Below, one piece after another: positions 1,446-48,200 of a DNA stretch of 64,000 nucleotides. The notes beneath the pieces were generated by a model. The model ran no database searches, was not told where the DNA came from, and worked only from the letters and a program-made list of their open reading frames with translations. The DNA comes from Fimbriosthenelais zetlandica. Lineage: Eukaryota. The stretch is from NCBI GenBank assembly GCA_977030845.1, contig OZ365109.1:45818001-45882000 (forward strand). The letters run 5' to 3'. The stretch's first letter is position 1, and each line of letters starts with the position of its first letter. Position numbers and translations under genes: made by a program.

Positions 1446-1589
1446 TCTCATTGAACTGTGTCCAATCTTTACTTTTGATAAACCTGAACCTTGGCCTAAT
1501 AATTTGGCCTAATGGATTTTCAAAAGCAATAGAACTTAAATAATTCACTCAGGAATTGCTGTTCGATTCCCGGAGCTGCCCAATGCATT

Positions 1590-2185
1590 TTCACCCCTAC
1601 ACCTCCACAATTGTACCTACATGGCTACTCCTACACCTCCACAATTGTACCTACACGGCTACCCCTACACCTAGACCTACACCTCTACCCCTACACCTCC
1701 ACAATTGTACCTACACGGCTACCCCTACACCTAGACCTACACCTCTACCCCTACACCTCCACAATTGTACCTACACGGCTACCCCTACACCTAGACCTAC
1801 ACCTCTACCCCTACACCTCCACAATTGTACCTACACGGCTACCCCTACACCTAGACCTACACCTCTACCCCTACACCTCCACAATTGTACCTACACGGCT
1901 ACCCCTACACCTCCACAATTGTACCTACACGGCTACCCCTACACCTCCACAATTGTACCTACACGGCTACCCCTACACCTCGACCTCAACAATTCTACCT
2001 ACACGTTTACCCCTAGACCTCTACACCCACACCTCTACCTACATACACCTTTACCCCTACACCACTACGCCTACACCTCTACAAATCTACCTACACCTCT
2101 ACCAACATACACCTTTAACCCTACACCTCTACAAATCTACCTACACCGCTTCCCCTACACCTCTACTTACACCTCTACCCCTACA
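1590..2185. repeat. Composite minisatellite: 34-bp unit CTACACCTCCACAATTGTACCTACACGGCTACCC, alternating with a 26-bp unit to give a 60-bp repeat
   Basis: About four 60-bp copies at ~1631-1870 (lines 1681, 1741 and 1801 are identical), flanked by 34-bp copies and a degenerate tail. ORFs 1556..2305 and 1611..2189 are repeat translations. Confidence 0.95.
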
Positions 2186-2688
2186 TTAATGAACAGAAAT
2201 ACACTATACAAATACATGAATATACAAATACACAAATATAGACAAATACACAAAAACTCATGTATATTGATTGACAAATACACAGATTCAATTAATATGC
2301 ACTGAAAATCATACACAAGTACACTTTTGTCTTCGCCAAAGGACACATTGTGTCTGCAAATTCTAGTTAATCAGTAACAGAGATATAATATTATGTGTGT
2401 TACTATTTCATGTGTGTCACTTAGTAGGTTTTTTGAATGTGTAAGCTAGACTTATAGTAAATGTAGGCTACTTGGAGTCTCAATAATATTATTCGGCCTG
2501 GGCAGGCCGCATCCATGGACTCTAGATTGACATTGATACTAAAAATGTCATCATTACTGATGATGTTATCCGAAGTAATCATCTTGAATGGCATCAACTC
2601 ATCAATAATAAAGCTCATTACTAGGTTATGACCTAGTGACCTAGCTGAAGCCCTAAGGTTCAGAGACTGGATTAGCTCATCAACTTAA

Positions 2689-29937: not shown

Positions 29938-30519
29938 AAAGCTCAGATCAAAAGAAAGGTAAAATATATAGCGATCTAGTTTCTTTATGGATCAATATCT
30001 GGAAACGTGTTCAAGAAATTAGGCCTAATTCTGACAAAACAATATTGTCCAACTGAAATGTCCTTGCAGCAATTTAAAGGTCTGGAGCTACAGGCAATAT
30101 TTGGTATGATCCATACCAATTTCTTACCAGCAAAATATTATTACACGTATAGGAAGCCTCTCTGTCCAATCCTTCACCGCGAATATAGCCTATAAGTACA
30201 GTTATGAGAATAAATGGACTCCCTGCATAAAATAGACCTACTTATAGGTGCATGTCATGACCACCTCAAGATTTGCTCTCAGGCAACTGGGAAGCTGAAA
30301 GATTGCATGGGCACGCGTGAGAGATGGAGAATTCTGGGAAGCACCCTTTACAATCTCACGAATGAGATATGATGATTTTGCTGTGATTCGAGGCGGGGAA
30401 AATTGCGATTAAAGAGTAAGGGTCCATGAGAGATGGAATGGTTCACTAGCTTAGGTCCATATCATGAAGATTTCCAGCAGATTAGATTCGCTTTCTCAAC
30501 ATTAAACTTGGTTTGGGAT

Positions 30520-31380
30520 GTAGGCCTACGGAGGGCTTTGATAGCCTAGATCGATCGTGTTGCCATGTGAGATGGCTGGTAGCCTATATATGTTTCCCAG
30601 AGTATTTTCACGATAGTCCTATTCAGAATAGGCTAGGCCTAGAAATGAAGACATGTATAGGCTAGCCCATTTAGGCCTACCTATAGGCATAGGCCCTATG
30701 CATAGGCCTAGGCCTATACCCGGTAGGCCTAATTCATAATTCGTGGTGGACTGGTGAGGGTGGGTGGGGGGGTGATGATAGACCTAGGCGGCTAGGCACT
30801 AGGTCTTTAATGGAAATCCCATCAAGATGAGGCTAGGCTTCTCATTGAAGACACACAAACGTTATCTAGCCTAGAACAGTAGCCTACAGGCCTAGGCCTA
30901 ACATAGACCTAATTATAGGCCTCCAAATAGCCTAAATCTCCATAGGCCTGGGCCTAATTTTGAGCTTTCTGCACATGGTCGTTAGGCCTATGAAGAATTT
31001 AGTGGGCCTAGGCCTAGGTAGAATGGCATAGGCTCCTTACGTAACAAAGGCATAGGTTCCTATGCCTACCTGGACTAGAATAGGCCTACTTTAGGCCTAG
31101 GCCCCTACTGAATAGGCCTAGACCTAGGCTTAGTGGAATGGTGGCACGAGGAAAGAAATTTTCATGTCTGGAGCAAAAGACCCACTAGGTCTAGGCCTAA
31201 TGCTTTGACTAGATGGAATCGGGCAAGAGGTCCATTAGGCTAAAGAGGCAAGAGGCCTACACCTGGGCGTTCTGTCCCTCATTAAAAGTAGGGGCCTCGG
31301 CCTAGGGCCTGGTCCTAGCCTATGACCTTGGCCTAGGCTACGGTATAGGCCCAAAGTCTAGGCCTAGGCCTAGGCCTATG
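30520..31380. repeat. Dense non-periodic cluster of TAGGCCTA/AGGCCT/CCTAGG palindromes
   Basis: About 20 or more occurrences in ~860 bp with unique spacers, ending in TAGGCCTAGGCCTAGGCCTA at ~31359-31378. Smaller clusters occur at ~21720-22690 and ~32560-32690. Confidence 0.85.
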
Positions 31381-31389
31381 TCCTTGTGG

Positions 31390-31745
31390 GTCCCTCACCC
31401 AGCTGGCGCAGAACGCAGTGAATCTACCGCTAGTTCCTGGTTTGCTTGCTAGGAGCGCCAGCGTCGGCTGAGCGTTGTATCTGCTTGTGGTTGCAGCCGG
31501 TTACATTCAGTACCCACACAGACACCACCCAGTTCACAACACGCGCTGGATCTTGAGCATAACATTGGCGGCCGTTGACACGCTTGTCCATCACCTACAC
31601 ACCCTTTCTGGACCTTTACTCGATCGTGGATAAACAGTCTGTGACCCCAAGATTAACTTGAAAGGCGGGGTTTACCTTCTGTGCACGTCAAACCACTCCG
31701 AGGTACCGAGTGTCCCGTTGTTACACTTCCATTGACTGAGACTCT
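31390..31745. promoter_or_regulatory. CpG-rich promoter/first-exon-like patch, possibly bidirectional
   Basis: About 20 CpGs in ~350 bp against a CpG-poor background. There is a minus-strand donor TGG|GTGAGG at ~31398 and a plus-strand donor AAG|GTAGGT at ~31784, with TAGGCCTA clusters on both sides. Confidence 0.4.
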
Positions 31746-33715
31746 GAGTGGTCAGGACCTTTTGTTTTGAAGGCAGATATAAGGTAGGTTCACAACTTCA
31801 GAAAGGGATTTACAAATATTACAACAGATACTTTCATTCATGGGGTCCCCATCTAGTATTTAAGGTATCAGGAAATGCGCTGGGTCATGAAATTAAACCA
31901 GGTTGCGCATCTTTTAGGGCATTTTATCCAGATTGTAGGCAGGCATGATAGCGTCTTGGGTTGGGGCCCGGGTGGGGTGATTCACACTGCCCGTGCACTG
32001 CCAAGGCATCCTCCGTCAACTGAAAACTAGCCTGGCAGGACTGGGCTGGGCTGATTCTTTGGGTGCCTTTTCCAGCATAGAGCAAGCAGTTTGTCTGATA
32101 TCCCGAACAAATAGCATTCACGAAGGAAGGTGTGGTTTTGCGAGGTTCCAAATGAATCTGACTGCGCACTGCGATATCTTTGAACCATCTTCTGACTTTC
32201 ACAGCTGGAGACTGGTCTGGAGGGATGATCATGACATGTGGGCGTTGTCCAAGCGTGTTTTCTATTGAAGTTTACATGTGTATTCCCCAAATAAAATGTA
32301 GTTCAGGATACCTTCTCTATTCAAGATCCATAACGTGAGGCAAGTAAGAAGCTCTAATTTTCTAAATGAGAATATTATTTAACTTTAAAGTTTAGCTTAG
32401 CCTGGCTAAAGCCAATGGTTCTTTATTTGAGCCTGAGCCTGAGGTGCCCAGAGAAGCTGGAATCTATGATGATTTTAGAACGACTGCAAATAATTTACCC
32501 ACTTTAAGTTCCACGTGTCTTGTGTGAAGCTAGGCCTCTGGAACTGGTTCCTATCCAATTAGGGCTTCTGGGGCTTATGGCCATGTTCTTGAAGATGTAG
32601 GGCTACGGCCCGGGTACCGGTAGGCCTACATTGTAGGCCTAGGCCTATAGCTATATAGGCAATACGTAGGCTATAAATATAGGCCTAGTAGACATAATGG
32701 AATTTTAACAAGGAAATAATCGAGAATACAATTTATAGAATTTTAATTTTAATTAGCCTAAGCTTAATTCCATGACCTGAACGTTGTCGATAATACTTTG
32801 AATAATGATTTTATATTACTTTAACCATCAATCATAATTATTCCATCATCTGACTCATATCAGTGTATTGAAAATGCTTAGAACTTGAAAGTAGGCCAAC
32901 GAAAATAACGCCATTGCCATTGGCCCCACTTTGTGTGAAACCTCATCCATATAATTGTCAAATCGTTGTCATTTGCTCTAGTAGGAAGTCAATGCCTTAC
33001 ATTTAAACACCCCACAGTAATGACAACACACCTGGATTCTCACTGCTTTATTAGTCGGGGTTTTGGAGCTTCTCCAAACCTCCTCTCTGCACAGCACTGA
33101 CTGCTATGGTCTATGGCTATTGCTCTAATACACAAATCTTCTTTATCCAATTTTCCACACTGGAAAAAAACTTTGAGATCTGGTGTTCGACTTTTAGTCA
33201 TTTAATGTTTCCTTCACAATGATACAAAGAAGCTCTTGCCTGATAGAAATTTCTTATTTGTGAATTATTCCTTCCTCGATAGGCCTGCACAAGGTTTTCA
33301 TGTCGGTATGATGCAGTTACTAGCAGATGCCCATTAATTATCATCTGCTCTACCTCAAATGTTATACACATGTGATACAAAATAATAAGTGATCCCAGAA
33401 TATTTAGCCTACCTTGTGGTATGTACGCGATCTGAAGGCCTACATATGGAATTTATCATCCAATAGACCATGCTGTCGATAATGTATAAATTCTTTGATA
33501 ATCTATTGTCATCCATGCTGCTACCTATTAATTTTCATAGATACAATCGTCTACCGGTATTATAGGCTACTACAAAGAGCCTGTTAAAAGCATAATCGTT
33601 TGTGTAATTTGTGTACCTTTCTATGACATGACATAGGCTATTTAATTTACAATTTCACCTAAACTTAAGCCCCTATTATAGATATCATGTGAATGTAAAT
33701 TTTTGGACATTGGTA

Positions 33716-34447
33716 CAGTAAAACCTCATTATAGTGACCAACTTGGGGGCTCCGAAAAAGTTTACAATTTTCACTAAATTCCATAATCAATGTTTACTAA
33801 AATCCAGAAGTTCCATAATCAGACTGTCATAATGTCACTTTTACCGTCATATTCTACCTCGCCACATCATGTGGACCAAACCCATTGAACATGGGAAAAG
33901 CTTATATTATTGGACGCTATTATGAAACTCCCACTCATCCTCCTTCCCTTCCAACCCCTGGGCTATAAGTTTACATTAAAGGCATCTAACGGCAATATAA
34001 TGCCTGTCCAGGCCATTCAGGATATGACTAGAAGGCAGGGGGAGCTTTGATGAGTGCCAGGTAGCCTATACCTTATTACTGACCTGTGTAATCATGATAG
34101 GTCAGTCCTCACTCGCCCCAGGTAATAGTAGAGCCTATTTATAACTATATTATAGCACTATAATATATATTTCATCATTATTTATTTAGGCACCAATGGT
34201 ATAATATTTCCCAGAGCTGAAGATTGAATTTCTAATATAGAAGATGGAGAAATTCCCATTTTGTGAGTCCCTCCAACGAGTATAGAATGATTCTATACCT
34301 ATTGGCCCCTCCAAAGAACACATCTGCATAGTGAAGATGTTTTTTAGTTCTTGAGATGTATCATGTAGTGAATTTATGATTGTCTCTGTAAATATTGAAC
34401 ATTTTCTTTGAGTCCTAAAATTTTCCACTATACAAGAGGCTTTACTG
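33716..34447. mobile_element. pogo/Tigger (Tc1-mariner)-like MITE
   Basis: TA|CAGTAAAACCTCATTATAGTG at the left and an imperfect inverted copy ...GAGGCTTTACTG|TA at the right. TA flanks both ends. Confidence 0.5.
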
Positions 34448-36873
34448 TAAAGTTCAGACAGTAGGCCCACAATTTTTATTGATCAATCTAAATAATTACT
34501 GCATATATTATGTACTGTACATTATTCTGTACTTAGCTAACGCTTGCATACAGGCCATTGTAAAACTATAGGCTAAAACATTGCTTTAAAATGCTGCCCT
34601 GTTCCTATGAATACATTAAACACTTAAAACTTTATTAGCCCAAACTGGAAAACTTTGATTGGTCAACCTAAATAATTGTGTTATTTATTTTCTGCATTTA
34701 TATCAAGGATACTCTATGTGTCAAAAGTGTAATATGTGTTGCATATATGTGCAGTACTTGATACCATTGTTCTACGTTATCATATGTGTACTCTGGTATG
34801 AATTATGTTTCACTTTTGTCATGCTCAGATGGCTTCTGGTAGAGGTGAGGATTGATATGGTGGGGTGGTGGGGTTGCTTGGTAATATACATGTGCAATTG
34901 AGAACATTATCGCGTGCAGATTTCTCGTGATAGCACGGGGCGAATGGGTTACATAGTAACACTATGATGGGACTGAAAATAGCAGAACATGCTGAGCTAG
35001 AATGATAAGGATGATACACCAGATGAGGGGTCTAGTCTGTGATAAGCACATGTATGTACTCTATACTACTAGTATTACTAGATAGCATGGAGTTTAGCAT
35101 TTTGGGTGTGAACACAACAGTACCCCTATCTTAAAGTATAAATGTTATTTTGACATGATTCAAATAGGGAAATGTGAGAAATACTCCTTTGTAAGTTATA
35201 GACCACCTGAAAGTACATATAATATGATGAACACATAATTCTGCATTTGGTTGAACTATTACGAAAGTCTTTTTTAACTTAAAAAAAGCCTTATTATGAC
35301 TAGTCATTGAGGCTGTCTCATTAGCAGGCTCGGTTTCCACTGAGTTGATTGACCTATGAAGACACACACAGAAATTTCACTGGGGACATAAGCGATATTA
35401 ATTATTTAATAATATTAAATATTTTCATTAGGGGTACAGGTCTAGAGGAGTTTTGGTGTTTTAATACATGGGGTATCCTACACCGTCTCCACTAAGATCA
35501 GATACGGTCTATAACCAAACTCTCCATCCCTACCTTTACTTTCGCCTCAAATATCACCTTAGTTCAGTCCATTCATTAATGTCTGGGTGTTCATTTAATA
35601 ATAGATAACAGAACAATAGATTATGAAAGATCCAGGCTTCTGGGACCCTTTTCATAATCAGCTGAGCATAGCCATACCGGGGTATATATTTCTGTTATGA
35701 AACCGGCTTCAGGATCTCATTGGTACAGGAGGGTATTTGTACTAGGCTCCCTGATGACTCATTAATTTATGATTAACCTGTTAAGTCAGCCCTATTGTAA
35801 GTAATTACCTTAATTAGATTCGGTTGAATTATCCCATGAGATCAGAAATAATACCTTCACGCTCGTGTACCGTGTCTTATTGTGATATGATTATAAATGA
35901 TCAACATGTACCTTTATGGTACAGATTGTTGTGTGGAGGCAATGACCCAGGAACAGTATTTCACTTCATGAGATATTCTATCTATTATATCGTTAATTTC
36001 TCTTGTGTCAAGTTATGATTTGAACGGATATTAACATTATTTTATACGATAATTACTTGTGTACACGGAATAACCAACTATGAATATTTTTATTAGTACG
36101 TGTATATCTTCTTAATTGAATCTCAGAGCATTCTGTGCCGACAGTGTGTTTCCTCTTTGTCCTGAGATACCCGGAAAAAATTGCTGACCAGACGTAACAA
36201 AATATTCTCTTACTACAAACTTTACAAGTAAATTTTCCCACATTAGGCCTAACTTTAAAAAATGACTTATTTATAAGCCTAATCATTCATAACTTAAAGA
36301 AAGAAAAATCTATGTGTTTTAGATCTATTCACAGTGAATGGTAGCAGCTCTAAACGCCTGGGTTCTGGAGACAGTGAGTAGCAGTTTGCTTAATACATAC
36401 ATGTCTCCTGTGTCTGGCTGATGTGGGCATCAGGTGCACCTCTTTTACCTCTCCTCATCGCTGTTAAGTGTTGCATGATGAGGGGGAAGACAGATCACTT
36501 GTGCTAAAGCCCTGTTGTTTGGTTACATATGTATGATTTTCTCTCCTACTATTTTGTCATTCATATATATAGGCCTAAATAATTGATCTATTTTTTTCGA
36601 CCATCAGTGAGTACTCTGCAGAGAATAGTGTTAAAAAATCACTTATGAGTACAGCAGAACTTGACATGCATTCGGTTAAAAAATTCACTTTATATGTGTA
36701 CAGTGCTCAGAACTTAGCATGCATTCAGCACTGTCTCCGGACTAAAGAAACCGTGCAGGCATACAATTTCGGAACAAAACACTATTCATTTTACAACCAA
36801 CCCGTTATACATCAAAAATATGTTCAGTCCTAATCCAAGGGTTGTTGTCAGGCAGCTAACTGCTATACAACCA

Positions 36874-36927
36874 ATATACGACGAGGACACAGGCATATAT
36901 TTGGCAGCAGTATTTAATAATTCCTCC
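36874..36927 (-). repeat. Split direct repeat B2 (54 bp), 3' terminus of the element
   Basis: Identical to B1. Confidence 0.95.
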
Positions 36928-36963
36928 TGGTATGAACAATGAATACACATAAAGCAGAATTAA

Positions 36964-37099
36964 AAAGTTTTTGATGCGGGTGCTGGCGCCTAACGGACAC
37001 TGGTCGAACGTGACGTAGGGCCTTAACGACAACCAGACAGTAACCATGGGCCAGTCTCTCTTGGCGATATATCTAGCGACTCGGGGCGGTCGCTAGGAC
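36964..37099 (-). repeat. Split direct repeat A2 (136 bp)
   Basis: Identical to A1 and directly abuts B1. Confidence 0.95.
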
Positions 37100-37153
37100 A
37101 TATACGACGAGGACACAGGCATATATTTGGCAGCAGTATTTAATAATTCCTCC
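37100..37153 (-). repeat. Split direct repeat B1 (54 bp)
   Basis: ATATACGACGAGGACACAGGCATATATTTGGCAGCAGTATTTAATAATTCCTCC, identical to 36874-36927. Confidence 0.95.
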
Positions 37154-37199
37154 AAACTGCCAAATATAACCGAAGTCAAGTCAAGTATGAGCACACCAT

Positions 37200-37530
37200 T
37201 TCCAACCTCAACTCCTGAGATGTAGAGGGTTGAATGTAAGAGTTAAACAAGAGGATCTCCAGCGACCCCTTAATGTTAATTATGCTTGACACACTGAACC
37301 TGAAGCCATATGAGTGGCTCTAGTATTGAAGTAGTAGTAGTTGAATCTGGCAGAGTGTAGTCTAAAGTCTTTCACCATATATCCAGTGCTTGATATCACT
37401 TCATAGATATATGGAGATAAGTAAAGTTCACAAGTCATGAAGTCACTTTCCACTGATGAGTAGGACAGTCTAGACAAATAACAGCCCAAGAATCGGAATG
37501 ATAAAGTTAACATTTGCTTCCAAGGCACCC
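37200..37530 (-). pseudogene. Decayed C-terminus of the tyrosine recombinase
   Basis: LHSAR (HxxR, 37357-37346), then RATHMA, a TAA (37282-37280), LTLRGRWRSS (GRW at 37267-37259), a 1-bp frameshift, and YIQP (Y at 37238-37236). This matches the HSxR...GRWxS...YI pattern of DIRS/Ngaro recombinases. Confidence 0.7.
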
Positions 37531-37649
37531 TCGTTTGTGTCTGACACCACTAATATATATAAATCTAAACAGTCTAAATAGTGAAACACTGAAAGATGAA
37601 GGCACGACGACAATGTTTCACCAACAAATCTGAAAATGCTGTTAAGATA

Positions 37650-38321
37650 ACATGGCCCATTGGCTATTTCCTTAGATACAAACTTGTACATTTGTGGTAT
37701 AGTTTTATCAGAAAGTACGGATTGATAGTTCCTCTCATCATATGGAGTCACCTCAGTGTCGAGATCACTGACACTAATATTATCTATCAAACTCTCAAAC
37801 ATTTTTACACGGGCAATTGATGGCTTCACAAATCCGCCATACAACATATAACCAAGCCTACACGGTTTGAGCTGACTATTTACACCATCTAATGTAAATT
37901 TGCAATTACAAATACCTAGTGAACACGACTTTAAAACATCAATAGAAACGCCAGCGGGCGATAATGGGGCTTTGACTAACAAACGGTCATCTCCCATCTC
38001 AAAGTTAACATTTTTACAAGCATAAGCAGGTGGTTCTGTCTCACCCAAGCCCCTGTCACAAGGGGCACTATACGAGCTTATAGAAAATACATTGTACTCA
38101 CATTTATTTTGAGAAACCTTACAAGTATTAAAGTGAGAAGTGGCCTCTGCTGCATCTTGACCGCCATCTTTACGGGAGCAGCTCGTTTCTGCATCATAAA
38201 CATCCGGGTCCGCATGAGGGACCAGTTCATGATAACTAACAATATTTTCGCGGGCTGTCACAACATGGCAAACATCTAGGTCTACACTAGCACTATTGAC
38301 CAACTTCTCACTGGCTAAATC
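37650..38321 (-). pseudogene. pol: Truncated pol (N-terminal, pre-RT region), cut before the RT core
   Basis: Open frame directly after the gag stop. YDERNYQSV...KEIANG resembles the segment preceding RT in DIRS-order Pol. No RT (Y/F)xDD motif or RNase H follows, and the rest of track ORF 37470..38303 looks like read-through past a deletion. Confidence 0.65.
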
Positions 38322-39206
38322 CTATCTAGATTTACCCGATATGTCCGTAGGTTTACAATCCTTGAGAGAGTGACTCTCCGAGTTGCATGCGGAGCAGCGA
38401 TGAGTGTAGAGGCAGGACTTGGAATGGCATCCGTTGTCAGTGTTGAAGCGGAAGCAGATCTTCATAGACATAGCTTCGTTACTGGACGAAGTGGCCGGTT
38501 TCACTGAAGCCTCCTTACTATTTTCAAAAGAAAAGAAGCGGAAGGAATCCTCGGGAGAGGGTTTGTCAAACGCTCTTACTCCTATTTGTTTCGCTTTCTT
38601 CCGGGTTTCAGCATCATACAATATGAAAGCACGATCCTGGAATGATCCTGTAGCCGCCTTTTCACACAGGCTCAATGTGTACTTTATGATCCCTTGTAAA
38701 GCCTGACCATCCTCATTCAGATCCTTCATGGTTTTAAGAGTTACCACCATCAAAGTTTCAAAAGAGGTGATGCTCTCACCTTTAGTAAGATGCCTCGACG
38801 GTGAAAATAATTTCTTGTTTGTTTTCCTCCGACGTCTCTTACTTTTACGCCCTCTGGACTTTGAGCGAGAACTACTGCGGGATGACGAGCTTGAACTGTC
38901 AGATTCCTCGCTGTTTGAATAGCAATCAGAAGGAGACGAGCTAGAACTATCTCTGGTTTTCTTGCAGTGTTTATCCTTCAGAACCACACTGGCTACTCTG
39001 TTAAGAAGTTTCTCCATTTTCCCAATGCGGGTCTCTTCCAACACAGATGCACGGACAGATGCGCCTCCTTCCCTGGATGGTTGAACTGCCTCCTCCACGG
39101 TTGGCTTCTCAAACTCGGCAGAAAATTGACATTTTTCTCCCGTAGGCGGCGAATGTGTGTAACCACACTTGTGGCAGCTCCTAGCCCCTTTCTTCGGCCT
39201 ACCCAT
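38322..39206 (-). CDS. gag: Gag-like ORF1 of the Ngaro element (294 aa from MGRPKK)
   Basis: Uninterrupted ORF. It has an N-terminal CHKCGYTHSPPTGEKC finger, a Ser/Arg-rich linker, a YDAETR motif (like the YD..FR of DIRS-order gag), and a C-terminal CFRFN..GC....C.YTH plus CSAC....HSLKDC double zinc finger. Confidence 0.85.
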   Translation of the reverse strand: MGRPKKGARSCHKCGYTHSPPTGEKCQFSAEFEKPTVEEAVQPSREGGASVRASVLEETRIGKMEKLLNRVASVVLKDKHCKKTRDSSSSSPSDCYSNSEESDSSSSSSRSSSRSKSRGRKSKRRRRKTNKKLFSPSRHLTKGESITSFETLMVVTLKTMKDLNEDGQALQGIIKYTLSLCEKAATGSFQDRAFILYDAETRKKAKQIGVRAFDKPSPEDSFRFFSFENSKEASVKPATSSSNEAMSMKICFRFNTDNGCHSKSCLYTHRCSACNSESHSLKDCKPTDISGKSR

Positions 39207-39256
39207 GTTCCAAGACGGGAATATGATAGGAATTTGCAAGGAAAACTCGCAGCGGC

Positions 39257-39392
39257 AAAGTTTTTGATGCGGGTGCTGGCGCCTAACGGACACTGGTCGA
39301 ACGTGACGTAGGGCCTTAACGACAACCAGACAGTAACCATGGGCCAGTCTCTCTTGGCGATATATCTAGCGACTCGGGGCGGTCGCTAGGAC
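39257..39392 (-). repeat. Split direct repeat A1 (136 bp)
   Basis: Base-by-base identical to 36964-37099. Confidence 0.95.
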
Positions 39393-41391
39393 GAATAGAT
39401 CTGTTCGTTCCTAAGACAAGGGTAAGGGTTGTTGCCAACCAGCTCTACAACCAGAAGTTGTTCAGTCCTAAGCCAAGGCTGATGGGTTGTTGCCAACCAC
39501 CTGTACAATCAGAATTGGTTCCGTCCTAAGCCAAGGGTTGTTGTCAACCAGCTGTACAACCAGAGTTTGTAAGGATTCTTATATTCCTCTGTACCTACCA
39601 AACGAATTCTGTACAATTCAGCAATCTTTAGACATCTGAAATTAAGTTCTATTTTATGTCTTTTTAATTGTAATAAATTAAAGGAAGGTTTTGGTTGGAA
39701 CACCCCATGGAAACTACATAATATTCTGGAAAGTGTAGAATGTCGAGAACCACTTCATATTGATAGTAGGTATGGAGTTCACAATGGGTATATCTTTGGG
39801 TACACATGGCATCTGAATTTTTATTCATTGAACTATAGAAGTCATAGTCTATACAAATGTAACATATACGTCAGGGACTTGCAGTGTGTGACATAGACAT
39901 GCCATGAGTTTCATCCCACGAGGAATTGTTATATACGTACTCATTGTGGTACTCACACCCATAGCTGTGCTTAAAACAACATCCCATTCCAATAGTATAG
40001 GACGATCTACTAAATGGCCGTGCGTCCATGTTTTGAATGCCAATTCTCCCAGACAAAAATGGTCGCAAAAATCCCTCTTGTATAGATCTATTTTATTATG
40101 AATCGGAGGGAGAAATAGCAAATAGTAGGACGATTTAATTATATAGCTTGTATTCATGGTATTTCATGAAAATTCTTCCAGACCAAAAAGTCTTCCTCCT
40201 GTATACATATTTGTGAATCTGATGATAAAATTGATATCATTTTCCCAGCTGTTTGAATGGTGGTGTTAAATAATATGAATTACTCGCTGGTTTCACAGTT
40301 ATGAACAATGGACCTCTTGCACTGTTAGCATGACAAGTGTATTGCTAGATTCAAGTACTCGTCTGTAGTCAGACTCAATCTTGAGCTACATACGGGGTTT
40401 TTATGGCCCTTCAACCTCTGCTTCTTACACGTATATAAAAGGCAAGTCGTTAAAGCCTCACCCAAGCGACAGTTCTATACACTCACATAAAAGACTAAGG
40501 TATTGCACCACCATATTCACTATAACAAGCATTTACCGCAGTAAACGCTCGAGTACTACTTCTTTTTATTGCCAGGATCGGTGAAAGGTATAGACTCTGC
40601 TTTATTGGAATTTTTATGTATATATCGCCACTAGTCACTGCGTAGTTCCTGCGGCTACTGAGGCTGATGAAGCCAATGCAAGATGAAACTTGCCATTCCC
40701 TCCACATCAATCCTCTTTGCTAAATGTCACGCAAGGAGTAATTGAATTGCTGGCATTTTTGACATTTATGCACAGATTTCCTTCACGGTTATTTTTTTTT
40801 AAAGATTGTTTTCTTTGCAAGGCTACCATGTTATTATCTGTAATATGGGAGACATACATGTGATGGCCATCTGAAGCTATTCCTGGAGGTACATGTATAT
40901 GAACCATTGCGTATCCGACTTGCTCCTATGCAGAATCATCAATGAGAAAAACGCTAAACTTGACTCGCCCTTGCCTCTCTCTATCAAGACCAAAGTTTCA
41001 GCCCATGTCAGCAATGCCAATATAATTTAGCCCTTGGAAGTCTTTGGGCCTGTTTTCAGAGTCTGAGAGAGAAATTCAAATACTAGGTACCACTATGTGG
41101 TACATGATTCCGACAACTTTCCTTGAGTTAGTAGGCCTAACACTTCCCCCCTGGTTTGGACCAGTTTTCGCCCCGGTGTACCAGTTCTAACGTACCCCCT
41201 GTCTAATGTACCCCCCGGTATAATAAACCTAGGTCTAAGATACCGGGGGTAACTTTGGCCTGGGTGCAATATACCCCCGGGGGTACTTTAAACCTAGTTC
41301 CAATATACCCCCGCCAGTTTCAAGTTACCCCCGGGGGTATATTGAACCTAGGTTCAATATACCCCCAATATATGAATAAATTGTAATACTC

Positions 41392-41990
41392 CCTGGGGGT
41401 ACACTAAACCTAGGCCGAATATACCCCCCTTCTGACTGAATATTATGTTTGAAGTTATTCCCTGGGGGTACACTAAACCTAGGCCGAATATACCCCCCTT
41501 ATGAATGTACATTATGTTTGAAGTTATTCCCTGGGGGTAAACTAAACCTAGGCCGAATATACCCCCCTTATGAATGTACATTATGTTTGAAGTTATTCCC
41601 TGGGGGTACACTAAACCTAGGCCGAATATACCCCCCTTATGAATGTACATTATGTTTGAAGTTATTCCCTGGGGGTACACTAAACCTAGGCCGAATATAC
41701 CCCCCTTATGAATGTACATTATGTTTGAAGTTATTCCCTGGGGGTACACTAAACCTAGGCCGAATATACCCCCCTTATGAATGTACATTATGTTTGAAGT
41801 TATTCCCTGGGGGTACACTAAACCTAGGCCGAATATACCCCCCTTATGAATGTACATTATGTTTGAAGTTATTCCCTGGGGGTACACTAAACCTAGGCCG
41901 AATATACCCCCCTTATGAATGTACATTATGTTTGAAGTTATTCCCTGGGGGTAAACTAAACCTAGGCCGAATATACCCCCCTTATGAATG
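41392..41990. repeat. 69-bp tandem array, ~9 near-identical copies
   Basis: Unit starts at 41392, 41461, 41530 ... 41944. Core GGGGGTACACTAAACCTAGGCCGAATATACCCCCC. The 23-aa repeat ORFs are artefacts. Confidence 0.97.
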
Positions 41991-42011
41991 TTGCAATTGC
42001 TATGTATCTTC

Positions 42012-42400
42012 GGGGGTACATTAGACCTAGGCTGAATGTACCCCAAGTACATTGAATCTCAATTGCAAGGTATCCCCCAGGGGGTACGTTAGACCTAGGC
42101 TGAATGTACCCCCAGTACATTGAATCTCAATTACAAGGTATCCCTCAGGGGGGGGGGGGGGGTACATTAGACCTAGGCTGAATGTACCCCCAGTACATTG
42201 AATCTCAATTGCAAGGTATCCTCGGGGGGGGGGGGGTACATTAGACCTAGGCTGAATGTACCCCCAGTACATTGAATCTCAATTGCAAGGTATCCTGGGG
42301 GGGTACATCAGACCTAGGCTGAATGTACCCCCAGTACATTGAATCTCAACTGCAAGGTATTCTCGGGGGTACATTAGACCTAGGCTGAATGTACCCCCAG
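42012..42400. repeat. ~66-78-bp tandem array, ~6 copies with a variable G tract
   Basis: Core GGGGGTACATTAGACCTAGGCTGAATGTACCCCC plus AGTACATTGAATCTCAATTGCAAGGTATCC. Confidence 0.93.
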
Positions 42401-44953
42401 GAGTTGAATCAAAGTTAAGTTATCAAAGAAATAATGGGGGGTACTTTAAACCTGGGGGGGGGGGTAATTTAAACCTCAGGTCTAAATGACCGGGGGGGTA
42501 TATCAGATTGGGGGGTAAGTTAGATCTGTTACACCGGGTCCCTCATCAACTTAATTTCCTGGAGTGCAAGTTCACGCGAAACCCGAGTTGTCATTAACTA
42601 GGAATAGTTCAAAGGCCGTGTGCTCTTTGTAACATGAAAAGAAAACATTAAAATTAAATTTTAATTCCCAATAAAAACAAAATCACTTTACTGTGTCTTT
42701 TTTGTACATGTTGTGCCTTGAACGAACCAGCGCCTTGCATTTGGAAATATTTCTTCATAATTCCATAGTGTTTTCTGTGAGCTAAAATTTGATATTTTTT
42801 CACATATGGATGGTTTTAAGGCATAATATTTCTTATCTTTCATGATGTATCGATAACCACCGGCTGATGAAAAGTGTCTGTTCAAGGTTTCTATCTCTGC
42901 CCTTCACATGATGGATGGGTCTGCAGGAGGTATCAGTGACTGTGGCTGGGGGGTGGGGGGTTGTGTTAGGCTCATGCACTCTGCATATACATATGTATAC
43001 TTACTTACATCATCATGTCTTGGCCAGGGTCGGAGTGGAAGGTATAGGTGTAAGTCCTAAACCCATCAGGTGAACATTGGAACTCCCCATGTGGTACATA
43101 CCTCACAACTGATTACTGTTCCGGCCTGTTTATATGCCTTGTTTTAAGCCCCTCACATACCAAGCCGACAAATGCCAACCGAGCGTCAGATTTGTGCCAG
43201 TCGATCTCTCGGTTTTAGAACGAATATCCAAACCGCCAAAAGGAACACGGGTCTAGATTTAATATTTCATAGAGTTGGATAACTCATCAAGTTATCAGGC
43301 GGTTTTTTCCAAAGTTTGCTAATCTCGGAATTTCACATTGGCGTGGACCTAATTTTACCTGGTCGGATTTGCATTCTTTGGTGAATGGTTGGAAAGAGTT
43401 GGAAATTGGAGGAAACTAGAAATTATTAATAGACGGAGCTGATACTAAGAAAAATTACACCATCTCGGTTGTTGAAATCGAGATGGATTTCAAATAATAT
43501 TTAATCAAATTAAAAATCATAAATAATATTTAATCAAATTAAAAATCATATTACACAATTGCCTCCATTGGCACACTTGGATATTGATAAGGAACAACAA
43601 CTTCTGTTGTATGTTCTTGCAGTTCGAAAATTAATCTGGTTTAATAAAATAACAAGATTGTATAATAATACGTACACTATTATTCCATAACGTCTTCCTG
43701 TTTTACATATACGCATGTAACAGCAATAGACACTCCTTATATCTTACGGGCTTGTATAACTTGTCCCCGTGGGCGTTGATTAATTTTTCTTTGATGAATG
43801 AGATGCATTATAAAGATGAGGCATCTCTGGTCTCAAGATCAGCCAGCGGGAGTGGGCATCATATAGGGTGTCGAGTTGCCTAGCAATCTAGTTTACTAGA
43901 TATTGCTCCCCGAGGGGAATGCATCAGGGGGTTCATGCCATGATATTTGGTGCCAAATCTGCCATATATATACACCAAAATCAATCACTTGTTTTGATCA
44001 ATAGTTTTGCATAATGACTTTCCTAGTATTGTTGGCTCACGGTCGCAATAATTTACAAGCATCTTCTAGTAGTGTATGATCTTACTTTGGTAAAAACAGC
44101 ATTTTTTAGGTTACATAAATCGATATCAATTGAAATCAATAATATTATAGTTAACAGTTTGGGAGACGAGAAAATGTTCGCAATTCGCAGGTGTTCCTAG
44201 ATTACAAGTATTCACTACTTGAAATGTAGAAAAGGCCAACCTTGTCTTCCACTATTTATGGTCGGAGGCATTTAAAGGAACTATTGAGAAGAACAGGACA
44301 TTTTATGTCAACAGGGTGCTTCGATCGTACCAAGTTGTTCTCGTCCTGAATAATTGCCTATACTGGACGTTAAAGAATATTCACTCATCTACTGGCTCAC
44401 TCACTTACTTACTCACTCATCCCCTCACTCACCAACTATCTCACTTAACCACTTATCTCAATGTAATTGAGGTTTTACTTGTCAGTGCAAATCTGTCCCT
44501 GTACTGTAGAGATCTCCAAAATATATTGATCTGATTTTCCAGTGAAGGTATAGCGACTTTGACAAGTTTGTTCTGGCTCTGATACTGCCAGGGCACATAT
44601 GAGGCACACCGATGTAGTAGTATCCTTGAGACTGGATGATGAACCGAGTAGGTGAGAGTAGTATGAATTGGCCTCAAGGCAGTGTCTACAGGGTGGTGGC
44701 CCCCAGTGCAAAAAGGGTAATTACCTCGATGAAATGGTTATAGTCTGGCCTACCTGCTTCCCAAAGTCTAACATTCTACATCCCACTTACATGGCTGGTA
44801 ACTCAGACGCGACTCTCTCCATCAATCTGCCATATAGTAACACGTTCTCATGTACACTTCAATCAGGGCATATTTTTGCGACTAACTGGTCGCAAAAATA
44901 AGTTCAAAGGCCGAAAGCTCCTCATCAACATTAATTTGTGCTTAATGTGGTCC

Positions 44954-45250
44954 CATGCACAATTCTGAACTTTCTGCTTAATATGTTCTCATGCAAACTT
45001 CTGATGTTGGAACATTGTACTTAATAATAATAATAATATTATCATGTTGTCATGCAAACTTCTGATTTTTGGAAATTTATGCTTAATTATATTGTCATGC
45101 AAACTTCTGATTTTGGAACTGTATGCTTTATTATGCTCTCATGAATGCAAACTTCTGATTTTGGAACTTTATGCTTAATTATGTTCTCATGCAAACTTCT
45201 GATTTTGGAACTTTGTCCTTAATATGCTCTCATGCAATCTTCAGATCTTA
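44954..45250. repeat. ~44-bp degenerate minisatellite, ~7 copies
   Basis: CATGCAAACTTCTGATTTTGGAACTTTATGCTTAATTATGTTCT repeated. Confidence 0.9.
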
Positions 45251-48200
45251 GGACTTGTTTCACAGCTTAACTTAACAAAATTTGAGTATATTGGGATAAA
45301 TAAATGTTTTTCCTTTGTATAGTATAGTATAGACAGCGCCGTATTGCACATGATGAATTATTGTTATGAATAATCAGCCTATCAGGCGAGCCCCATGCGA
45401 CAATATCTCGCCTAAGATAATGAGAGACTAGATCTATAAAGGAACCTACCCACTGTTCCTGTTATCGCTTCAATTCTCGGCTTAGTGGCGTCCCGACATT
45501 ATGAACCTAATCACACGGTTCATAATATTTACTAGCGGTCATGTAGAGATTTATGCTTCACGGTATGTATATGTATCTCTTGTATGAATATACTGTGATG
45601 GCCAGATATTTGTTTGCCTCGCGCTGGTGAAGTACTCAGTGAAGTAACTGCCACTTAAATCACCTATCACAGGTGCTTTTACAACAAGATATATGTTGGC
45701 CATTAGGATTGCTCTGTTTTGCTCTCTTTCCACAGGCCTACAACCAAGCGTTAATCAAGTTATGCAGTTGTTTGTACTGTTCAAAGGTTTTTCCACTATT
45801 GTTGGACATACCATTTCCTCAACTTTCTTCCAGATATATGTCTATCTCCTTTCGGTCGGTTAAGGAGGCCTAGATGTCAAAATAATAGTAAATCTAGGGC
45901 CTATTTCAGAAGAAAAATGTGCTATAAATGGCTCATTGATTTGGACAATGGCTTATGTAGTGCATGCTTCTTATGAAATGTGCCCCTTATTCGGATTGTA
46001 TAATTTTCCATCCTATATTTATCTTATATTTATGAGAGAAGATAACATCTCTCACTATTTTCTCAAACATTTTATGATTCACTGTAACTTTGCTCGCAAT
46101 TGCTTTCACATCACATTAGTAAGGAGCATGAACTCTTTTAACAAGAAACCCATTCTGAAGTAAAACTGAAGATAGGGTTTCCAATGCAATTGCTGGAAAA
46201 GTTCCAGCGAATTTCTGAACAAAAAAGTGAAAGGTGTATTACTTAGGCCTATATGAACTCCTGTATATTATATATTCACTATCTATGTACACTATTATAC
46301 ATATAATGTGATATATATGACCCTGGGATCTTAGAAGGAATTGGAAGAAAGTCCAGTCCATATCCTGGATATGTTTATGAAACTGGATAAGGAATTGATG
46401 TAGTCTCGGTGGTTTCATCCGGGCAGTTCAGTTTATTTATACAATATCAAATTCCAGTCTACTGTTCCACCTCCAGAAACTTAGGATGAGATGAGGTGAA
46501 CTCAAGGATGAGTAGGGAATAGTTATAAGATGATATCATCATTGGTTTACCTGCACCGTTATTCAGCCACAAACTCGTGATATGGCCTGGCTATATATAA
46601 ACAACTCTTCATTTGATTGTCTTGTTCCCATCATTTCTTTTCATTTGCACTTTTTTCCACCAGTGTTTGTCCTGCAAATGACGAGTTTCATGGAAAACAT
46701 ATTGTCTCTCAGAGTGAATGATGCCTACCTATTATCTTTGACAAGTGGTTGTTCTCAAGTTTTGAATAGGAAAAGAGGCATTGTTTTTTTCATGCTAGAG
46801 TACAAAGCAAAAAATATGATGAACAAATTGATTACCAAAAATTTTGAATTTGACTATGTATATGCTTCATGGATTGTTGCTGTCATAAAATTGAATGGCA
46901 CACATGACTCTTAACAACTTAGGAAGATGTGATTAATTAGCAAATTGCGAATTAAATTTAATGTATTTTGTTTCATTCGCAAATTTCCATGTTCCCATTT
47001 CGAATGTCTAATGAGTGTATTGTCCAGTTTTCTTTTTGTCTAGCAGCTCATGTGGGACTAGTAGCTATTCTACTCGTCATCGTATTAGTTGCAACTCATC
47101 CTGTCCACTGCTTGCCTGTCCTATCATCCTATTGTTAGTTGCACAAGGACATTTCTGGCCGAGTCCCAAGTTTGAACTGAACTAGATCAGTCAGTGCCCA
47201 CCCATTATACCGAGCAGGACACACTGGCTTAACCTGCACAGTTGTGGGTGCAAATGTTTTATTTTTGCATTTCCACCTTCCAATCACACCCAGTTTTTTC
47301 TGGGATGTCTGAGATATAACCTTGTTGAAAAATAACATTTACACTCAACTGTTGAGTAGGTACAACAGGTTGTGGTCGAACACCCAGTACAGTTCAATAT
47401 TCAAACTCTAAATATAAGGTCCATAGTCTGGAAGCTTTCCGATAGTATTAAATTGTTTATATTGCACTATAACAAGGCTTTCAATTCTGTTAGTTTAACA
47501 AGGATAAATGGTTAAAATGACGAATATGCAAGGGATTTGTCACTTCCGTATCTTCCTATGAGATCTGAGAAAAAATTCTGGTCAGATTTCACTGACAATC
47601 GATGGCCAAGCTGCCACTAAAACTATCGAGTGAAAACCCCTTAATGCAATTGGATGGATACACCGCAAACTTAAAATTAACCGGTATGCCTTTAATAATG
47701 TTTTTTTTGCCAGATGGCGGGATTTAACTCAAAAGAAACACAATTGCCAAGTTTCAGATTCTGAGGAGATAATTAAGTGGAAAGGGTCGGTGAATGAAAC
47801 CTTTCTTTCTGTTGAACTGCATTGAATTTTTTCCCTTCCCTTTTGATTTTGAGGAAGAAAATTTCCAATTCCCATGCGCATTTTATCTCTTCTTAAACAA
47901 AGTCTCGTCCATGCAAATAAAAAAAGTCAAGTAAGCTTCATTCTGTCAACAAGGGACACAATGCAAAATAGGGCGATCCCATGAGAAGCGAAGTTTTATA
48001 TGGGTTGCATATATATAGAATGAAGGACTTTTTTATCGTCAATATTGTCATAGTACTGATTTGCTGACTTTTCCCAGAGGGAATCCAGGTGCATATTTAG
48101 AGAATACCTAGAAGGTAGTTTACCCCGGATGATCCTAACTAAGTCTTATGATTTGGGTCAGTAACCAGATGCTCTGTGTCAAGACTGCTACCTTTACAGC

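What the first reader, a model, noticed from the sequence alone, without database searches (positions are those of the whole stretch)
36874..39392. Young, gag-retaining non-autonomous Ngaro retrotransposon
Seen: A1=A2 (136 bp) and B1=B2 (54 bp) with no mismatches, and gag is intact. RT/RNaseH is deleted, and the recombinase tail carries a nonsense codon, a frameshift and an apparent short insertion. Known: terminal repeats of DIRS-order elements are homogenised during replication. Inference: the enzymes decayed before the last transposition, so this may be a propagating gag-only parasite lineage that borrows RT and YR in trans while keeping its own RNA-packaging protein. I do not know of this being well described for Ngaro elements.
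Basis: partly seen in the sequence, partly recalled or inferred. Interest (0 to 1): 0.75.

Follow-up and report, generated by a model that had tools for sequence, protein, structure and literature searches.

The report
Gag-keeping non-autonomous Ngaro retrotransposon
This is a young 2.5-kb jumping gene that has lost its own copying and insertion enzymes but still moved to at least two places in this animal genome, so it must borrow those enzymes; this makes it an uncommon but not revolutionary variant of a known transposon type.

Summary
On the minus strand, 39392-36874 is an A1-ORFs-B1-A2-spacer-B2 element. A is 136/136 identical and B is 54/54. It sits in a ~58-bp tandem unit with no target duplication.

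- **gag:** 294 aa, intact, and keeps all 21 family-invariant residues.
- **Pol remnant:** a single TAG is followed in frame by 283 codons. These are a conserved 218-aa pre-RT domain plus a 57-aa RT piece (YLDD changed to YLDC).
- **Deletions:** two deletions removed the RT core, RNase H and about 4/5 of the recombinase.
- **Recombinase tail:** it is real (20 bits against a family profile; the best of 2000 shuffles scored 6.6). It carries a stop, a frameshift and an insertion.

A second copy on another chromosome shares every deletion and lesion. It has different flanks and the same A/G variant in both B repeats, so the crippled form transposed. Full-length relatives with RT and recombinase exist, but none with matching ends was found.

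Selection on gag is only suggestive: 4/4 indels keep the frame, while substitutions are too few to judge. "Gag-only" is inaccurate. A sister lineage arose by different deletions and also keeps gag plus the pre-RT domain.

The parts
36874..39392 (-). Whole non-autonomous Ngaro-like element (2519 bp); 5' end at 39392, 3' end at 36874
   Evidence: Boundaries come from the repeats and from the exact end of similarity to the C10 copy, whose flanks differ. There is no target-site duplication.
39257..39392 (-). A1 repeat. It begins with a stem-loop (TAGCGAC...GTCGCTA) followed by ATATATCGCC.
   Evidence: 136/136 identical to A2. The stem-loop folds at -18.8 kcal/mol, z -2.4. The homologous stem in the C1:29.83M relative shows compensatory changes.
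38322..39206 (-). gag ORF, 294 aa plus a TAG stop. It has an N-terminal Cys/His knuckle, a Ser/Arg-rich stretch, a C-terminal CCCH finger and a CX2CX4HX4C knuckle.
   Evidence: Open frame. 105 gag matches in the genome. All 21 invariant columns of a 13-sequence gag alignment are kept.
37668..38321 (-). Pre-RT N-terminal pol domain (218 aa), in the gag frame directly after the TAG. It has a conserved Cys core (C133, C138, C140, C154).
   Evidence: Matches the pol N-termini of 77 loci. All 14 invariant columns of 35 sequences are kept. The AF2 core at aa 110-218 has pLDDT about 90, with no PDB fold match. The gag-TAG-pol context is conserved in 12 relatives.
37656..37667 (-). Deletion junction D1: an in-frame loss of about 112 aa, the N-terminal half of RT
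   Evidence: tblastn of 12 relatives' pol proteins. Pol N-terminal similarity ends at 37656, and the RT piece starts at 37667 about 110 residues further along in every relative.
37470..37667 (-). RT remnant (about 57 aa, YLDD changed to YLDC plus a 4-aa insertion) and the stop of ORF2 (37470-37472)
   Evidence: Alignments to L022, L037, L028 and L020 pol.
37194..37522 (-). Tyrosine-recombinase C-terminal remnant (profile positions about 212/246-300 of 305). The second deletion junction D2 is at its upstream edge. It has a TAA stop at 37280-37282, a frameshift at about 37244, and an insertion at about 37328-37345.
   Evidence: tblastn with the L079 and L080 recombinases gave E 0.015 and 0.002. 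In hmmsearch the frame-2 hit continues in frame 1 at the next profile position. With X at the breaks it scores 20.4 bits, and 0 of 2000 shuffles exceeded 6.6.
37100..37153 (-). B1 repeat
   Evidence: 54/54 identical to B2.
36964..37099 (-). A2 repeat
   Evidence: 136/136 identical to A1.
36928..36963 (-). 36-nt spacer between A2 and B2. The equivalent spacer is 28 nt in the C13 sister lineage and 168 nt in L079.
36874..36927 (-). B2 repeat; the 3' terminus ends in ...GTATAT
39402..39536 (.). Flanking ~58-bp tandem array. A further related unit lies at 36797-36857 on the other side, and the element interrupts one unit precisely.
   Evidence: TRF, repeat family D2, flank reading.

Best explanation
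This is a young insertion of an internally deleted, non-autonomous Ngaro-type (split-direct-repeat, tyrosine-recombinase) retrotransposon.

**Shown**
- Two deletions removed the RT core, RNase H and about four fifths of the recombinase.
- What remains is the terminal repeats, an intact gag and, behind a family-typical in-frame TAG, a conserved pre-RT pol domain.
- The same crippled structure sits at two unrelated loci, so it moved after losing its enzymes.

**Inferred**
- Its RNA was reverse-transcribed and its DNA integrated by RT and recombinase supplied in trans by one of the many full-length Ngaro families in this genome.
- Recognition probably uses the conserved ...ATAT|GT... end junction and the 5' stem-loop of the A repeat.
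- The replication model for these elements regenerates A and B from single templates, which explains their identity within each copy.

**Open**
- Whether gag and the pre-RT domain are kept by selection, because they act preferentially on the RNA that encodes them. I put this at about 40%.
For: **Architecture**
- A 136/136 and B 54/54, and the B1|A2 junction equals the joined ends.
- The same A1-gag-pol-YR-B1-A2-spacer-B2 plan is seen in a full-length public relative, L079.

**Family**
- Relatives have gag, a TAG, then a 650-720-aa pol with RVT_1 and RNase H. A PF00589 recombinase lies just downstream and there is no methyltransferase.

**Losses**
- The deletion map is, and the recombinase remnant.

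**Mobility after the losses**
- The C10 copy is colinear with the window copy and differs by 9 substitutions in 2519 bp (0.36%).
- It shares both junctions and all lesions, has different flanks, and carries a later nested 999-bp TIR element.
- B1 and B2 differ between the copies at the same position but are identical within each copy.
- The window insertion is precise, with no duplication, inside a tandem unit.

**Donors exist**
- Several Ngaro subfamilies have 98-100% identical copies with open gag and pol. Open recombinase frames of about 250-340 aa lie about 2 kb downstream of other relatives' pol.

**Shared cis features**
- The closest RT-bearing relative (C1:29.83M) has a homologous start to the A repeat, with compensatory stem changes.

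**Hints of constraint**
- 4 of 4 indels between the copies are multiples of three (p about 0.012).
- Both frame-disabling lesions (the stop and the frameshift) lie in the 316-bp tail rather than in the 1536 bp of gag plus pre-RT (p about 0.03).
- gag and the pre-RT domain keep every family-invariant residue.

**A second, independent case**
- A derivative lineage (L025, C13/C15) made by different deletions also keeps gag plus the pre-RT domain.
Against: - There are only two full copies, so this is hardly an amplified lineage.
- No autonomous element with similar A/B repeats is in the assembly. The nearest gag is 53-56% identical, and the only related termini are a 3' fragment at 82-86%. The donor is therefore unidentified, and cross-mobilisation by such distant enzymes is undemonstrated.
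- Substitutions between the copies (gag 1 synonymous and 2 non-synonymous; ORF2 the same) look neutral, with no statistical power.
- Segment-by-segment identity to relatives does not show the RT remnant diverging faster than gag.
- The lesion-placement and indel tests are post hoc and rest on very small counts.
- No expression data are available.
Confidence: 0.82

Rival explanations
1. Strong version of the first reader's idea. This is a long-lived parasitic lineage whose gag (and the read-through pre-RT domain) is maintained by purifying selection because the proteins act in cis on their own RNA, while RT and recombinase are always borrowed. It would be the tyrosine-recombinase counterpart of plant TR-GAG or mammalian HAL1 elements.
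For: - Both frame-disabling lesions (the stop and the frameshift), and a 6-8-codon insertion, are confined to the recombinase tail, while 1536 bp of gag plus pre-RT are clean.
- All 4 indels between the copies preserve the frame.
- All invariant residues are kept.
- No close autonomous parent is left in the genome, which implies the lineage outlived it.
- An independent sister lineage keeps the same two modules.
- No public protein spans the D1 junction, so the form is private to this genome.
Against: - Only two copies exist.
- Substitution counts are neutral-looking and powerless.
- In the C15 copy of the sister lineage, the stretch matching ORF2 holds two stops, and its gag match and open frame are shorter (272 against 303 aa).
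- Internal deletions in pol and the recombinase may simply be the ones that leave the 5' and 3' cis signals intact, so keeping gag could be incidental.
- The element was flagged because gag is intact, which is an ascertainment bias.
Confidence: 0.35
2. An ordinary dead relic. One decayed genomic copy was duplicated by a non-transpositional DNA process such as segmental duplication or ectopic recombination, and no borrowing of enzymes was involved.
For: The copy number is only two, and no partner element was found.
Against: - Similarity between the copies stops exactly at the element ends, and the flanks are unrelated.
- The window copy interrupts a tandem unit precisely, without loss or duplication.
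- The B1/B2 difference between the copies is concerted.
- A and B are perfectly identical in both copies.
Confidence: 0.04
3. DNA-level mobility only. A borrowed tyrosine recombinase excised and re-integrated a circular DNA form, Crypton-like, with no reverse transcription.
For: - The element keeps the exact B|A junction that a circle would carry.
- The insertion has no target duplication, as expected for recombinase integration.
Against: - A circle made by recombination between the A or B repeats would carry one A and one B. Re-integration would not rebuild the full A1...B1-A2-B2 set seen in both copies.
- Both copies persist, so the process was replicative.
- This rests on the published replication model (PMC6681497), not on a test done here.
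Confidence: 0.06
4. A host gene domesticated from gag, with the repeats being leftovers.
For: The gag ORF is intact with three zinc-binding motifs.
Against: - There are two near-identical copies at unrelated loci with full transposon termini.
- The insertion sits in a tandem repeat.
- No conserved public orthologue was found.
Confidence: 0.02

Closest known systems
Ngaro-like tyrosine-recombinase retrotransposons (order DIRS), as defined structurally in PMC4157794, PMC3783388 and PMC6681497
   Same: - Split direct repeats in the order A1...B1-A2-B2, with the internal repeats downstream of the recombinase.
- A gag-like ORF with zinc-finger motifs.
- An RT/RNase H pol without a methyltransferase.
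- A PF00589 recombinase as the last gene.
- No target-site duplication.
- Repeats identical at insertion.
   Different: - This copy has lost the RT core, RNase H and most of the recombinase.
- In this clade gag and pol share one frame across a single TAG.
- The pol starts with a conserved Cys-rich pre-RT domain of unknown fold.
- I did not find either of those two features described in the papers I read.
SIRE, the short non-autonomous derivative of VIPER in Trypanosoma cruzi (PMC6681497)
   Same: A truncated derivative of a split-direct-repeat, recombinase-encoding retrotransposon that depends, if mobile, on autonomous copies.
   Different: SIRE is about 435 bp, made of element ends only, with no gag. 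The element here keeps a full gag and 283 codons of pol.
TR-GAG elements of plants (non-autonomous LTR retrotransposons that keep only gag; e.g. PMC13570524, PMC6022998); from my own knowledge also HAL1, the ORF1-only LINE-1 derivative of mammals
   Same: A non-autonomous retroelement that keeps its nucleic-acid-binding structural protein and borrows its enzymes.
   Different: - It belongs to a different order of retrotransposons, with different termini and integration chemistry.
- The copy number here is tiny.
- A piece of pol is kept as well.
Sister lineage in the same genome (L025 703-3254 = C13:27995903-27998454; further copies on C15 and C13)
   Same: About 2.55 kb, with the A1-gag-TAG/TGA-pol remnant-B1-A2-spacer-B2 plan, an intact gag and pre-RT domain, homologous B repeat and A stem-loop, and young copies at 98-100% identity.
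   Different: - It arose by different deletions: the RT start is kept, while the RT core and the whole recombinase are gone.
- Its gag is only about 54% identical.
- It has more copies and older relatives, one of which still has a recombinase N-terminus.

Membership tests
Ngaro-like YR retrotransposons | Split direct repeats A1 ... B1-A2-B2, with the internal pair downstream of the recombinase | tested here: met
   A 136/136 and B 54/54, in the order A1-ORFs-B1-A2-36 nt-B2. The full-length relative L079 has the same order.
Ngaro-like YR retrotransposons | gag-like first ORF | tested here: met
   A 294-aa ORF homologous to 105 gag loci in the genome. It has CCCH and CCHC motifs and keeps all 21 invariant columns.
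Ngaro-like YR retrotransposons | pol with RT and RNase H | tested here: inconclusive
   Relatives have RVT_1 and RT_RNaseH. This copy keeps only the pre-RT domain and a 57-aa RT piece with YLDC, and has no RNase H. It is homologous by descent but not functional.
Ngaro-like YR retrotransposons | Tyrosine recombinase (PF00589) encoded after pol | tested here: inconclusive
   Only the last ~55-90 residues survive, and they are broken (20.4 bits). Relatives have a full recombinase directly after pol.
Ngaro-like YR retrotransposons | No methyltransferase domain (distinguishes Ngaro from DIRS1-like and PAT-like) | tested here: met
   Pfam finds only RVT_1 and RNase H in the pol of 5 relatives. In L079 the recombinase ORF overlaps the pol end, which leaves no room for a methyltransferase.
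Ngaro-like YR retrotransposons | Integration without target-site duplication | tested here: met
   Both copies lack a duplication, and the window copy splits a 58-bp unit cleanly.
Ngaro-like YR retrotransposons | RT and recombinase group with reference Ngaro sequences in a tree | not tested
   No named reference sequences were available from the tools. The classification rests on structure only.
Non-autonomous gag-retaining retroelement (TR-GAG / HAL1-like concept) | No functional polymerase or integration enzyme of its own | tested here: met
   The RT core and RNase H are deleted, YLDD is mutated, and the recombinase is reduced to a broken tail.
Non-autonomous gag-retaining retroelement (TR-GAG / HAL1-like concept) | Copies at different loci share the same deletions, showing mobility after the loss | tested here: met
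   The C1 and C10 copies are colinear, share all lesions and have unrelated flanks. There are only two copies.
Non-autonomous gag-retaining retroelement (TR-GAG / HAL1-like concept) | An identifiable autonomous partner with matching termini | tested here: not met
   No element with similar A/B repeats plus RT and recombinase is in the 447-Mb assembly. The closest RT-bearing relative shares only about 70% of the first 56 nt of A.
Non-autonomous gag-retaining retroelement (TR-GAG / HAL1-like concept) | gag under purifying selection within the non-autonomous lineage | tested here: inconclusive
   gag shows 1 synonymous and 2 non-synonymous substitutions. 4 of 4 indels are multiples of three, and the lesion-placement test gives p about 0.03.

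The most novel reading that the evidence does not exclude
In this Ngaro clade, gag together with the read-through pre-RT pol domain may form a module that must be supplied in cis. Selection would then keep it open in non-autonomous lineages that borrow only RT, RNase H and recombinase. This genome would hold at least two independently formed lineages of that kind, a tyrosine-recombinase counterpart of TR-GAG and HAL1 that has not been described.
Probability: 0.3. Interest if true: 0.55.

Novelty: new variant of a known kind. Interest (0 to 1): 0.38.

Why it matters
Non-autonomous derivatives are well documented for LTR elements, LINEs and DNA transposons. They are hardly documented for tyrosine-recombinase retrotransposons, whose replication is known mostly from models.

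A crippled element that still moved shows three things about Ngaro replication:
- RT and recombinase can act in trans.
- The sequences needed in cis lie within about 2.5 kb: the A and B repeats, gag and the start of pol.
- There are concrete candidates for the recognition signals, namely the ATAT|GT junction and the 5' stem-loop.

If gag and the pre-RT domain prove to be required in cis, the unknown pre-RT domain would gain a functional handle. As it stands, this is a small, tidy example rather than a surprise.

Tried and rejected
- **Pfam on gag, ORF2 and the 82-aa tail ORF:** no meaningful family.
- **Genome search with the 82-aa tail piece:** it found only the two copies. The recombinase homology became visible only with a family profile and with X at the breaks.
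- **Fetching more sequence:** I therefore could not read the recombinases of in-genome relatives, full autonomous copies, or the other non-autonomous elements noted by the scan.
- **Loci with fragments of A or B (L004-L009):** no gag, pol or recombinase next to them, so none is the partner.
- **Word search with gag:** it was swamped by the Ser/Arg-rich stretch and gave two distant hits.
- **Exact-sequence look-ups of gag:** nothing on record.
- **Exhaustive search with ORF2:** 76 representatives, best 43% identity, none spanning the D1 junction.
- **Fold of the pre-RT domain:** the core model is confident, but Foldseek and VIA-align found no match (best Z 2.4).
- **Segment-by-segment identity to relatives:** it gave no clear excess divergence of the RT remnant.
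- **Strict motif scan for the ATATC box upstream of gag in 17 relatives:** it hit only three copies (C15, of the C13 sister lineage; C21:0.23M; C10:13.68M), and the latter two hits lie inside the gag open frame, so no 5' box was found in the more distant subfamilies and the shared 5' signal cannot be generalised to the whole family.
- **Surroundings:** Rfam (30000-46000) and Pfam on three other long ORFs of the window (two of them near 41.4-42.1 kb) found nothing relevant.
- **Rejected readings:** segmental duplication, domesticated gag gene, assembly artefact.
Full report
**What is there**

Read on the minus strand, window 39392 to 36874 is a 2519-bp element with this layout:

| Part | Window coordinates |
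|---|---|
| A1 | 39392-39257 |
| 50-nt leader | 39256-39207 |
| gag (ATG to TAG) | 39206 to 38324-38322 |
| ORF2, 283 codons, same frame | 38321-37473 |
| Non-coding tail | 37469-37154 |
| B1 | 37153-37100 |
| A2 | 37099-36964 |
| Spacer, 36 nt | 36963-36928 |
| B2 | 36927-36874 |

A1 and A2 are identical at 136/136, and B1 and B2 at 54/54. B1 runs straight into A2, so the internal junction (...GTATAT|GTCCTAGC...) is exactly the 3' end joined to the 5' end. The element splits one unit of a ~58-bp tandem array cleanly, with no duplication and no loss. This agrees with an earlier first-reader note on the same stretch.

**What family it belongs to**

The window lies on a 447-Mb, 79-contig assembly of an animal genome. 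That genome holds more than 100 gag matches and 77 matches to ORF2.

- In relatives, gag and pol share one frame across a single stop, with a conserved AAA-TAG-GAx context.
- The pol is 650-720 aa, with RVT_1 at about residues 260-430 and an RNase H at about 570-650. There is no methyltransferase.
- A PF00589 recombinase lies about 2 kb downstream of the pol start in many copies, and starts right at the pol end in loci I could read.
- A full-length public relative (L079, ENA ERZ25767047) shows A1-gag-pol-recombinase-B1-A2-168 nt-B2 over 4.8 kb. L080 has the same gene order.

[quoted passage not shown] I had no named reference sequences, so I did not test placement in a tree.

**What has been lost**

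Comparing twelve relatives' pol proteins with the element gave this map:

- ORF2 residues 1-218 are the pol N-terminus that precedes RT.
- At 37656-37667 there is an in-frame deletion (D1) of about 112 residues, the first half of RT.
- A 57-residue RT piece follows. Its catalytic YLDD reads YLDC and is followed by a 4-residue insertion.
- After about 37500 all similarity to RT and RNase H ends (D2).

For the recombinase I built a profile from 84 public relatives.

- Frame 2 matches the HxxR box and the RGRW motif. Frame 1 then continues at exactly the next profile position with the tyrosine-bearing motif.
- Read through with X at the stop and at the frameshift, the tail scores 20.4 bits. The best of 2000 shuffles scored 6.6.
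- The lesions are a TAA stop at 37280-37282, a 1-nt frameshift near 37244, and a 6-8-codon insertion just after HxxR.
- Only about the last fifth of the recombinase is left.

Its single junction at about 37650 is the first of two.

**What has been kept**

- **gag:** it keeps all 21 invariant columns of a 13-sequence alignment. These include an N-terminal Cys/His knuckle, a CCCH finger and a CX2CX4HX4C knuckle.
- **Pre-RT domain:** it keeps all 14 invariant columns of a 35-sequence alignment, including four cysteines.
- **Fold of the pre-RT domain:** the core model is confident (pLDDT about 90 for residues 110-218), but there is no match in the PDB. Only 76 representatives among 1.84 billion proteins match it, all consistent with pol N-termini. 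Its function is unknown.
- The label "gag-only" is therefore inaccurate.

**Did the crippled form move?**

Yes.

- The genome holds one other full copy, at C10:51055035-51058563. It is colinear over the whole element, and similarity stops at the element ends. The flanks are unrelated.
- That copy carries a later 999-bp insertion with terminal inverted repeats and a TA duplication inside ORF2.
- Apart from that, the copies differ by 9 substitutions (0.36%) and 4 indels. They share both deletion junctions and every recombinase lesion.
- One substitution is present in both B1 and B2 of the C10 copy. This fits the published model in which each repeat pair is regenerated from one template at replication (PMC6681497), and suggests a replication round after the copies diverged.
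- The remaining matches are a 3' B-A-B fragment at 82-86% on C23 and short scraps. None has coding sequence next to it.

**Who supplied the enzymes?**

This is unknown.

- No element with similar A or B repeats and an RT is in the assembly. The nearest gag proteins are 53-56% identical.
- Potential donors are plentiful. Several subfamilies have 98-100% identical copies with open gag and pol, and open recombinase frames lie downstream of other relatives' pol.
- The closest RT-bearing relative (C1:29.83M) has a homologous start to its A repeat. The stem-loop shows compensatory changes (AGCGAC/GTCGCT against AGTGAC/GTCACT), followed by the same ATATAT box.
- The C13 lineage and L079 show the same plan, and all three elements whose 3' ends I could read (this one, the C13 lineage and L079) end in ...ATAT.
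- This makes cross-mobilisation plausible. It is an inference, and the motif could not be found in more distant subfamilies.

**Is gag under selection?**

The evidence is suggestive only.

- *For:* all four indels between the copies are multiples of three (+9, -6, +3, +3; p about 0.012).
- *For:* both frame-disabling lesions lie in the 316-bp tail rather than in the 1536 bp of gag plus pre-RT (p about 0.03).
- *Against:* each ORF shows 1 synonymous and 2 non-synonymous substitutions.
- *Against:* identity to relatives, taken segment by segment, shows no clear excess divergence of the RT remnant.
- *Caveat:* the tests are post hoc and rest on tiny counts.

**A second case in the same genome**

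The closest gag relatives (C13:27.99M, C13:22.38M, C15:1.22M) belong to another short lineage.

- L025 703-3254 is a complete 2552-bp A1-gag-pol remnant-B1-A2-28 nt-B2 element, with A identical at 145/145.
- Its 393-aa pol remnant keeps the pre-RT domain and the start of RT. It lacks the RT core through an in-frame deletion at different junctions, and has no recombinase at all.
- It has three young copies (98-100%) and older relatives at 84-92%. One of these still has a recombinase N-terminus.
- Two further first-reader notes describe non-autonomous split-direct-repeat elements elsewhere in this genome. I could not read them.
- Repeated retention of gag plus the pre-RT domain fits a cis requirement. 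It fits equally well the simple rule that only deletions sparing the 5' and 3' signals survive.

**Literature**

- Split direct repeats and their expected identity at insertion are described for Ngaro, PAT-like and VIPER elements (PMC6681497, PMC4157794, PMC3783388).
- The one non-autonomous derivative that I found described for split-direct-repeat recombinase retrotransposons is SIRE of VIPER, which has no gag (PMC6681497).
- gag-only non-autonomous elements are known for plant LTR retrotransposons as TR-GAG (PMC13570524, PMC6022998). From my own knowledge, HAL1 is the equivalent for LINE-1.
- In four full-text searches I found no description of a gag-retaining non-autonomous Ngaro. That is a limited search, not proof of absence.

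**Verdict**

- Its stronger part, a propagating lineage under selection for gag, is unproven.
- One detail is inaccurate: the element is not gag-only.
- It is a new variant of a known kind and of moderate interest.

Broken frames were read only with X at the breaks.

Noticed in passing
L025 703-3254 (G000 C13:27995903-27998454, minus); copies at C15:1219759-1222262 and C13:22383772-22386033: An independent non-autonomous Ngaro lineage of 2552 bp. It has gag (303 aa) and a 393-aa pol remnant (the pre-RT domain plus the start of RT, with the RT core deleted in frame) and no recombinase. A is 145/145 identical. There are three copies at 98-100% identity, plus older 84-92% relatives on C10:13.58M and C19:8.71M.
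   Followed up: partly
L024 750-992 and 3254-3496 (G000 C13:22.38M): This copy of the sister lineage lacks its B1-A2-B2 end and is bracketed by a perfect 243-bp direct duplication of flanking DNA. The pattern resembles an earlier scan note about a truncated Ngaro bracketed by a 73-bp host duplication.
   Followed up: partly
window 38322-38324 and the gag/pol junctions of 12 relatives (e.g. L042 2227-2229, L037 1402-1404): gag and pol share one frame across a single stop (TAG in 11 relatives, TGA in one) in a conserved AAA-TAG-GAx context. This suggests programmed read-through across the family.
   Followed up: partly
window 39365-39388 (minus); L051 about 2486-2541; L025 about 3215-3250; L079 3640-3665: A stem-loop lies at the very start of the A repeat, with compensatory base changes between lineages, followed by an ATAT(A/C)T box. 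All three elements whose 3' ends I read end in ...ATAT, so the B|A junction reads ATAT|GT. It is a candidate recombinase or priming site.
   Followed up: partly
L016 4265-5263 (G000 C10, inside the second copy): A 999-bp non-coding element with about 24-bp terminal inverted repeats (GAGTAGTGGCGGG...) and a TA duplication is nested in ORF2 of the C10 copy. It is probably a Tc1/mariner-type MITE.
   Followed up: no
L005, L006, L007 (G000 C39:2.65M, 1.28M, 4.01M), positions 1501-1595: At least three copies (99% identical) of a repeat longer than 2.3 kb each hold a 95-bp piece of the A end, spacer and B start of this element at 94-96% identity. There is no gag, pol or recombinase nearby.
   Followed up: partly
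window 37668-38321 (minus) and alignment A1: The pre-RT domain of this Ngaro clade has four invariant cysteines and a confident predicted fold with no PDB match. It has only 76 representatives among 1.84 billion proteins.
   Followed up: partly
window 1-2300: This stretch has strongly skewed composition (GC skew -0.75) and long open frames on both strands, which is typical of a simple or satellite repeat.
   Followed up: no
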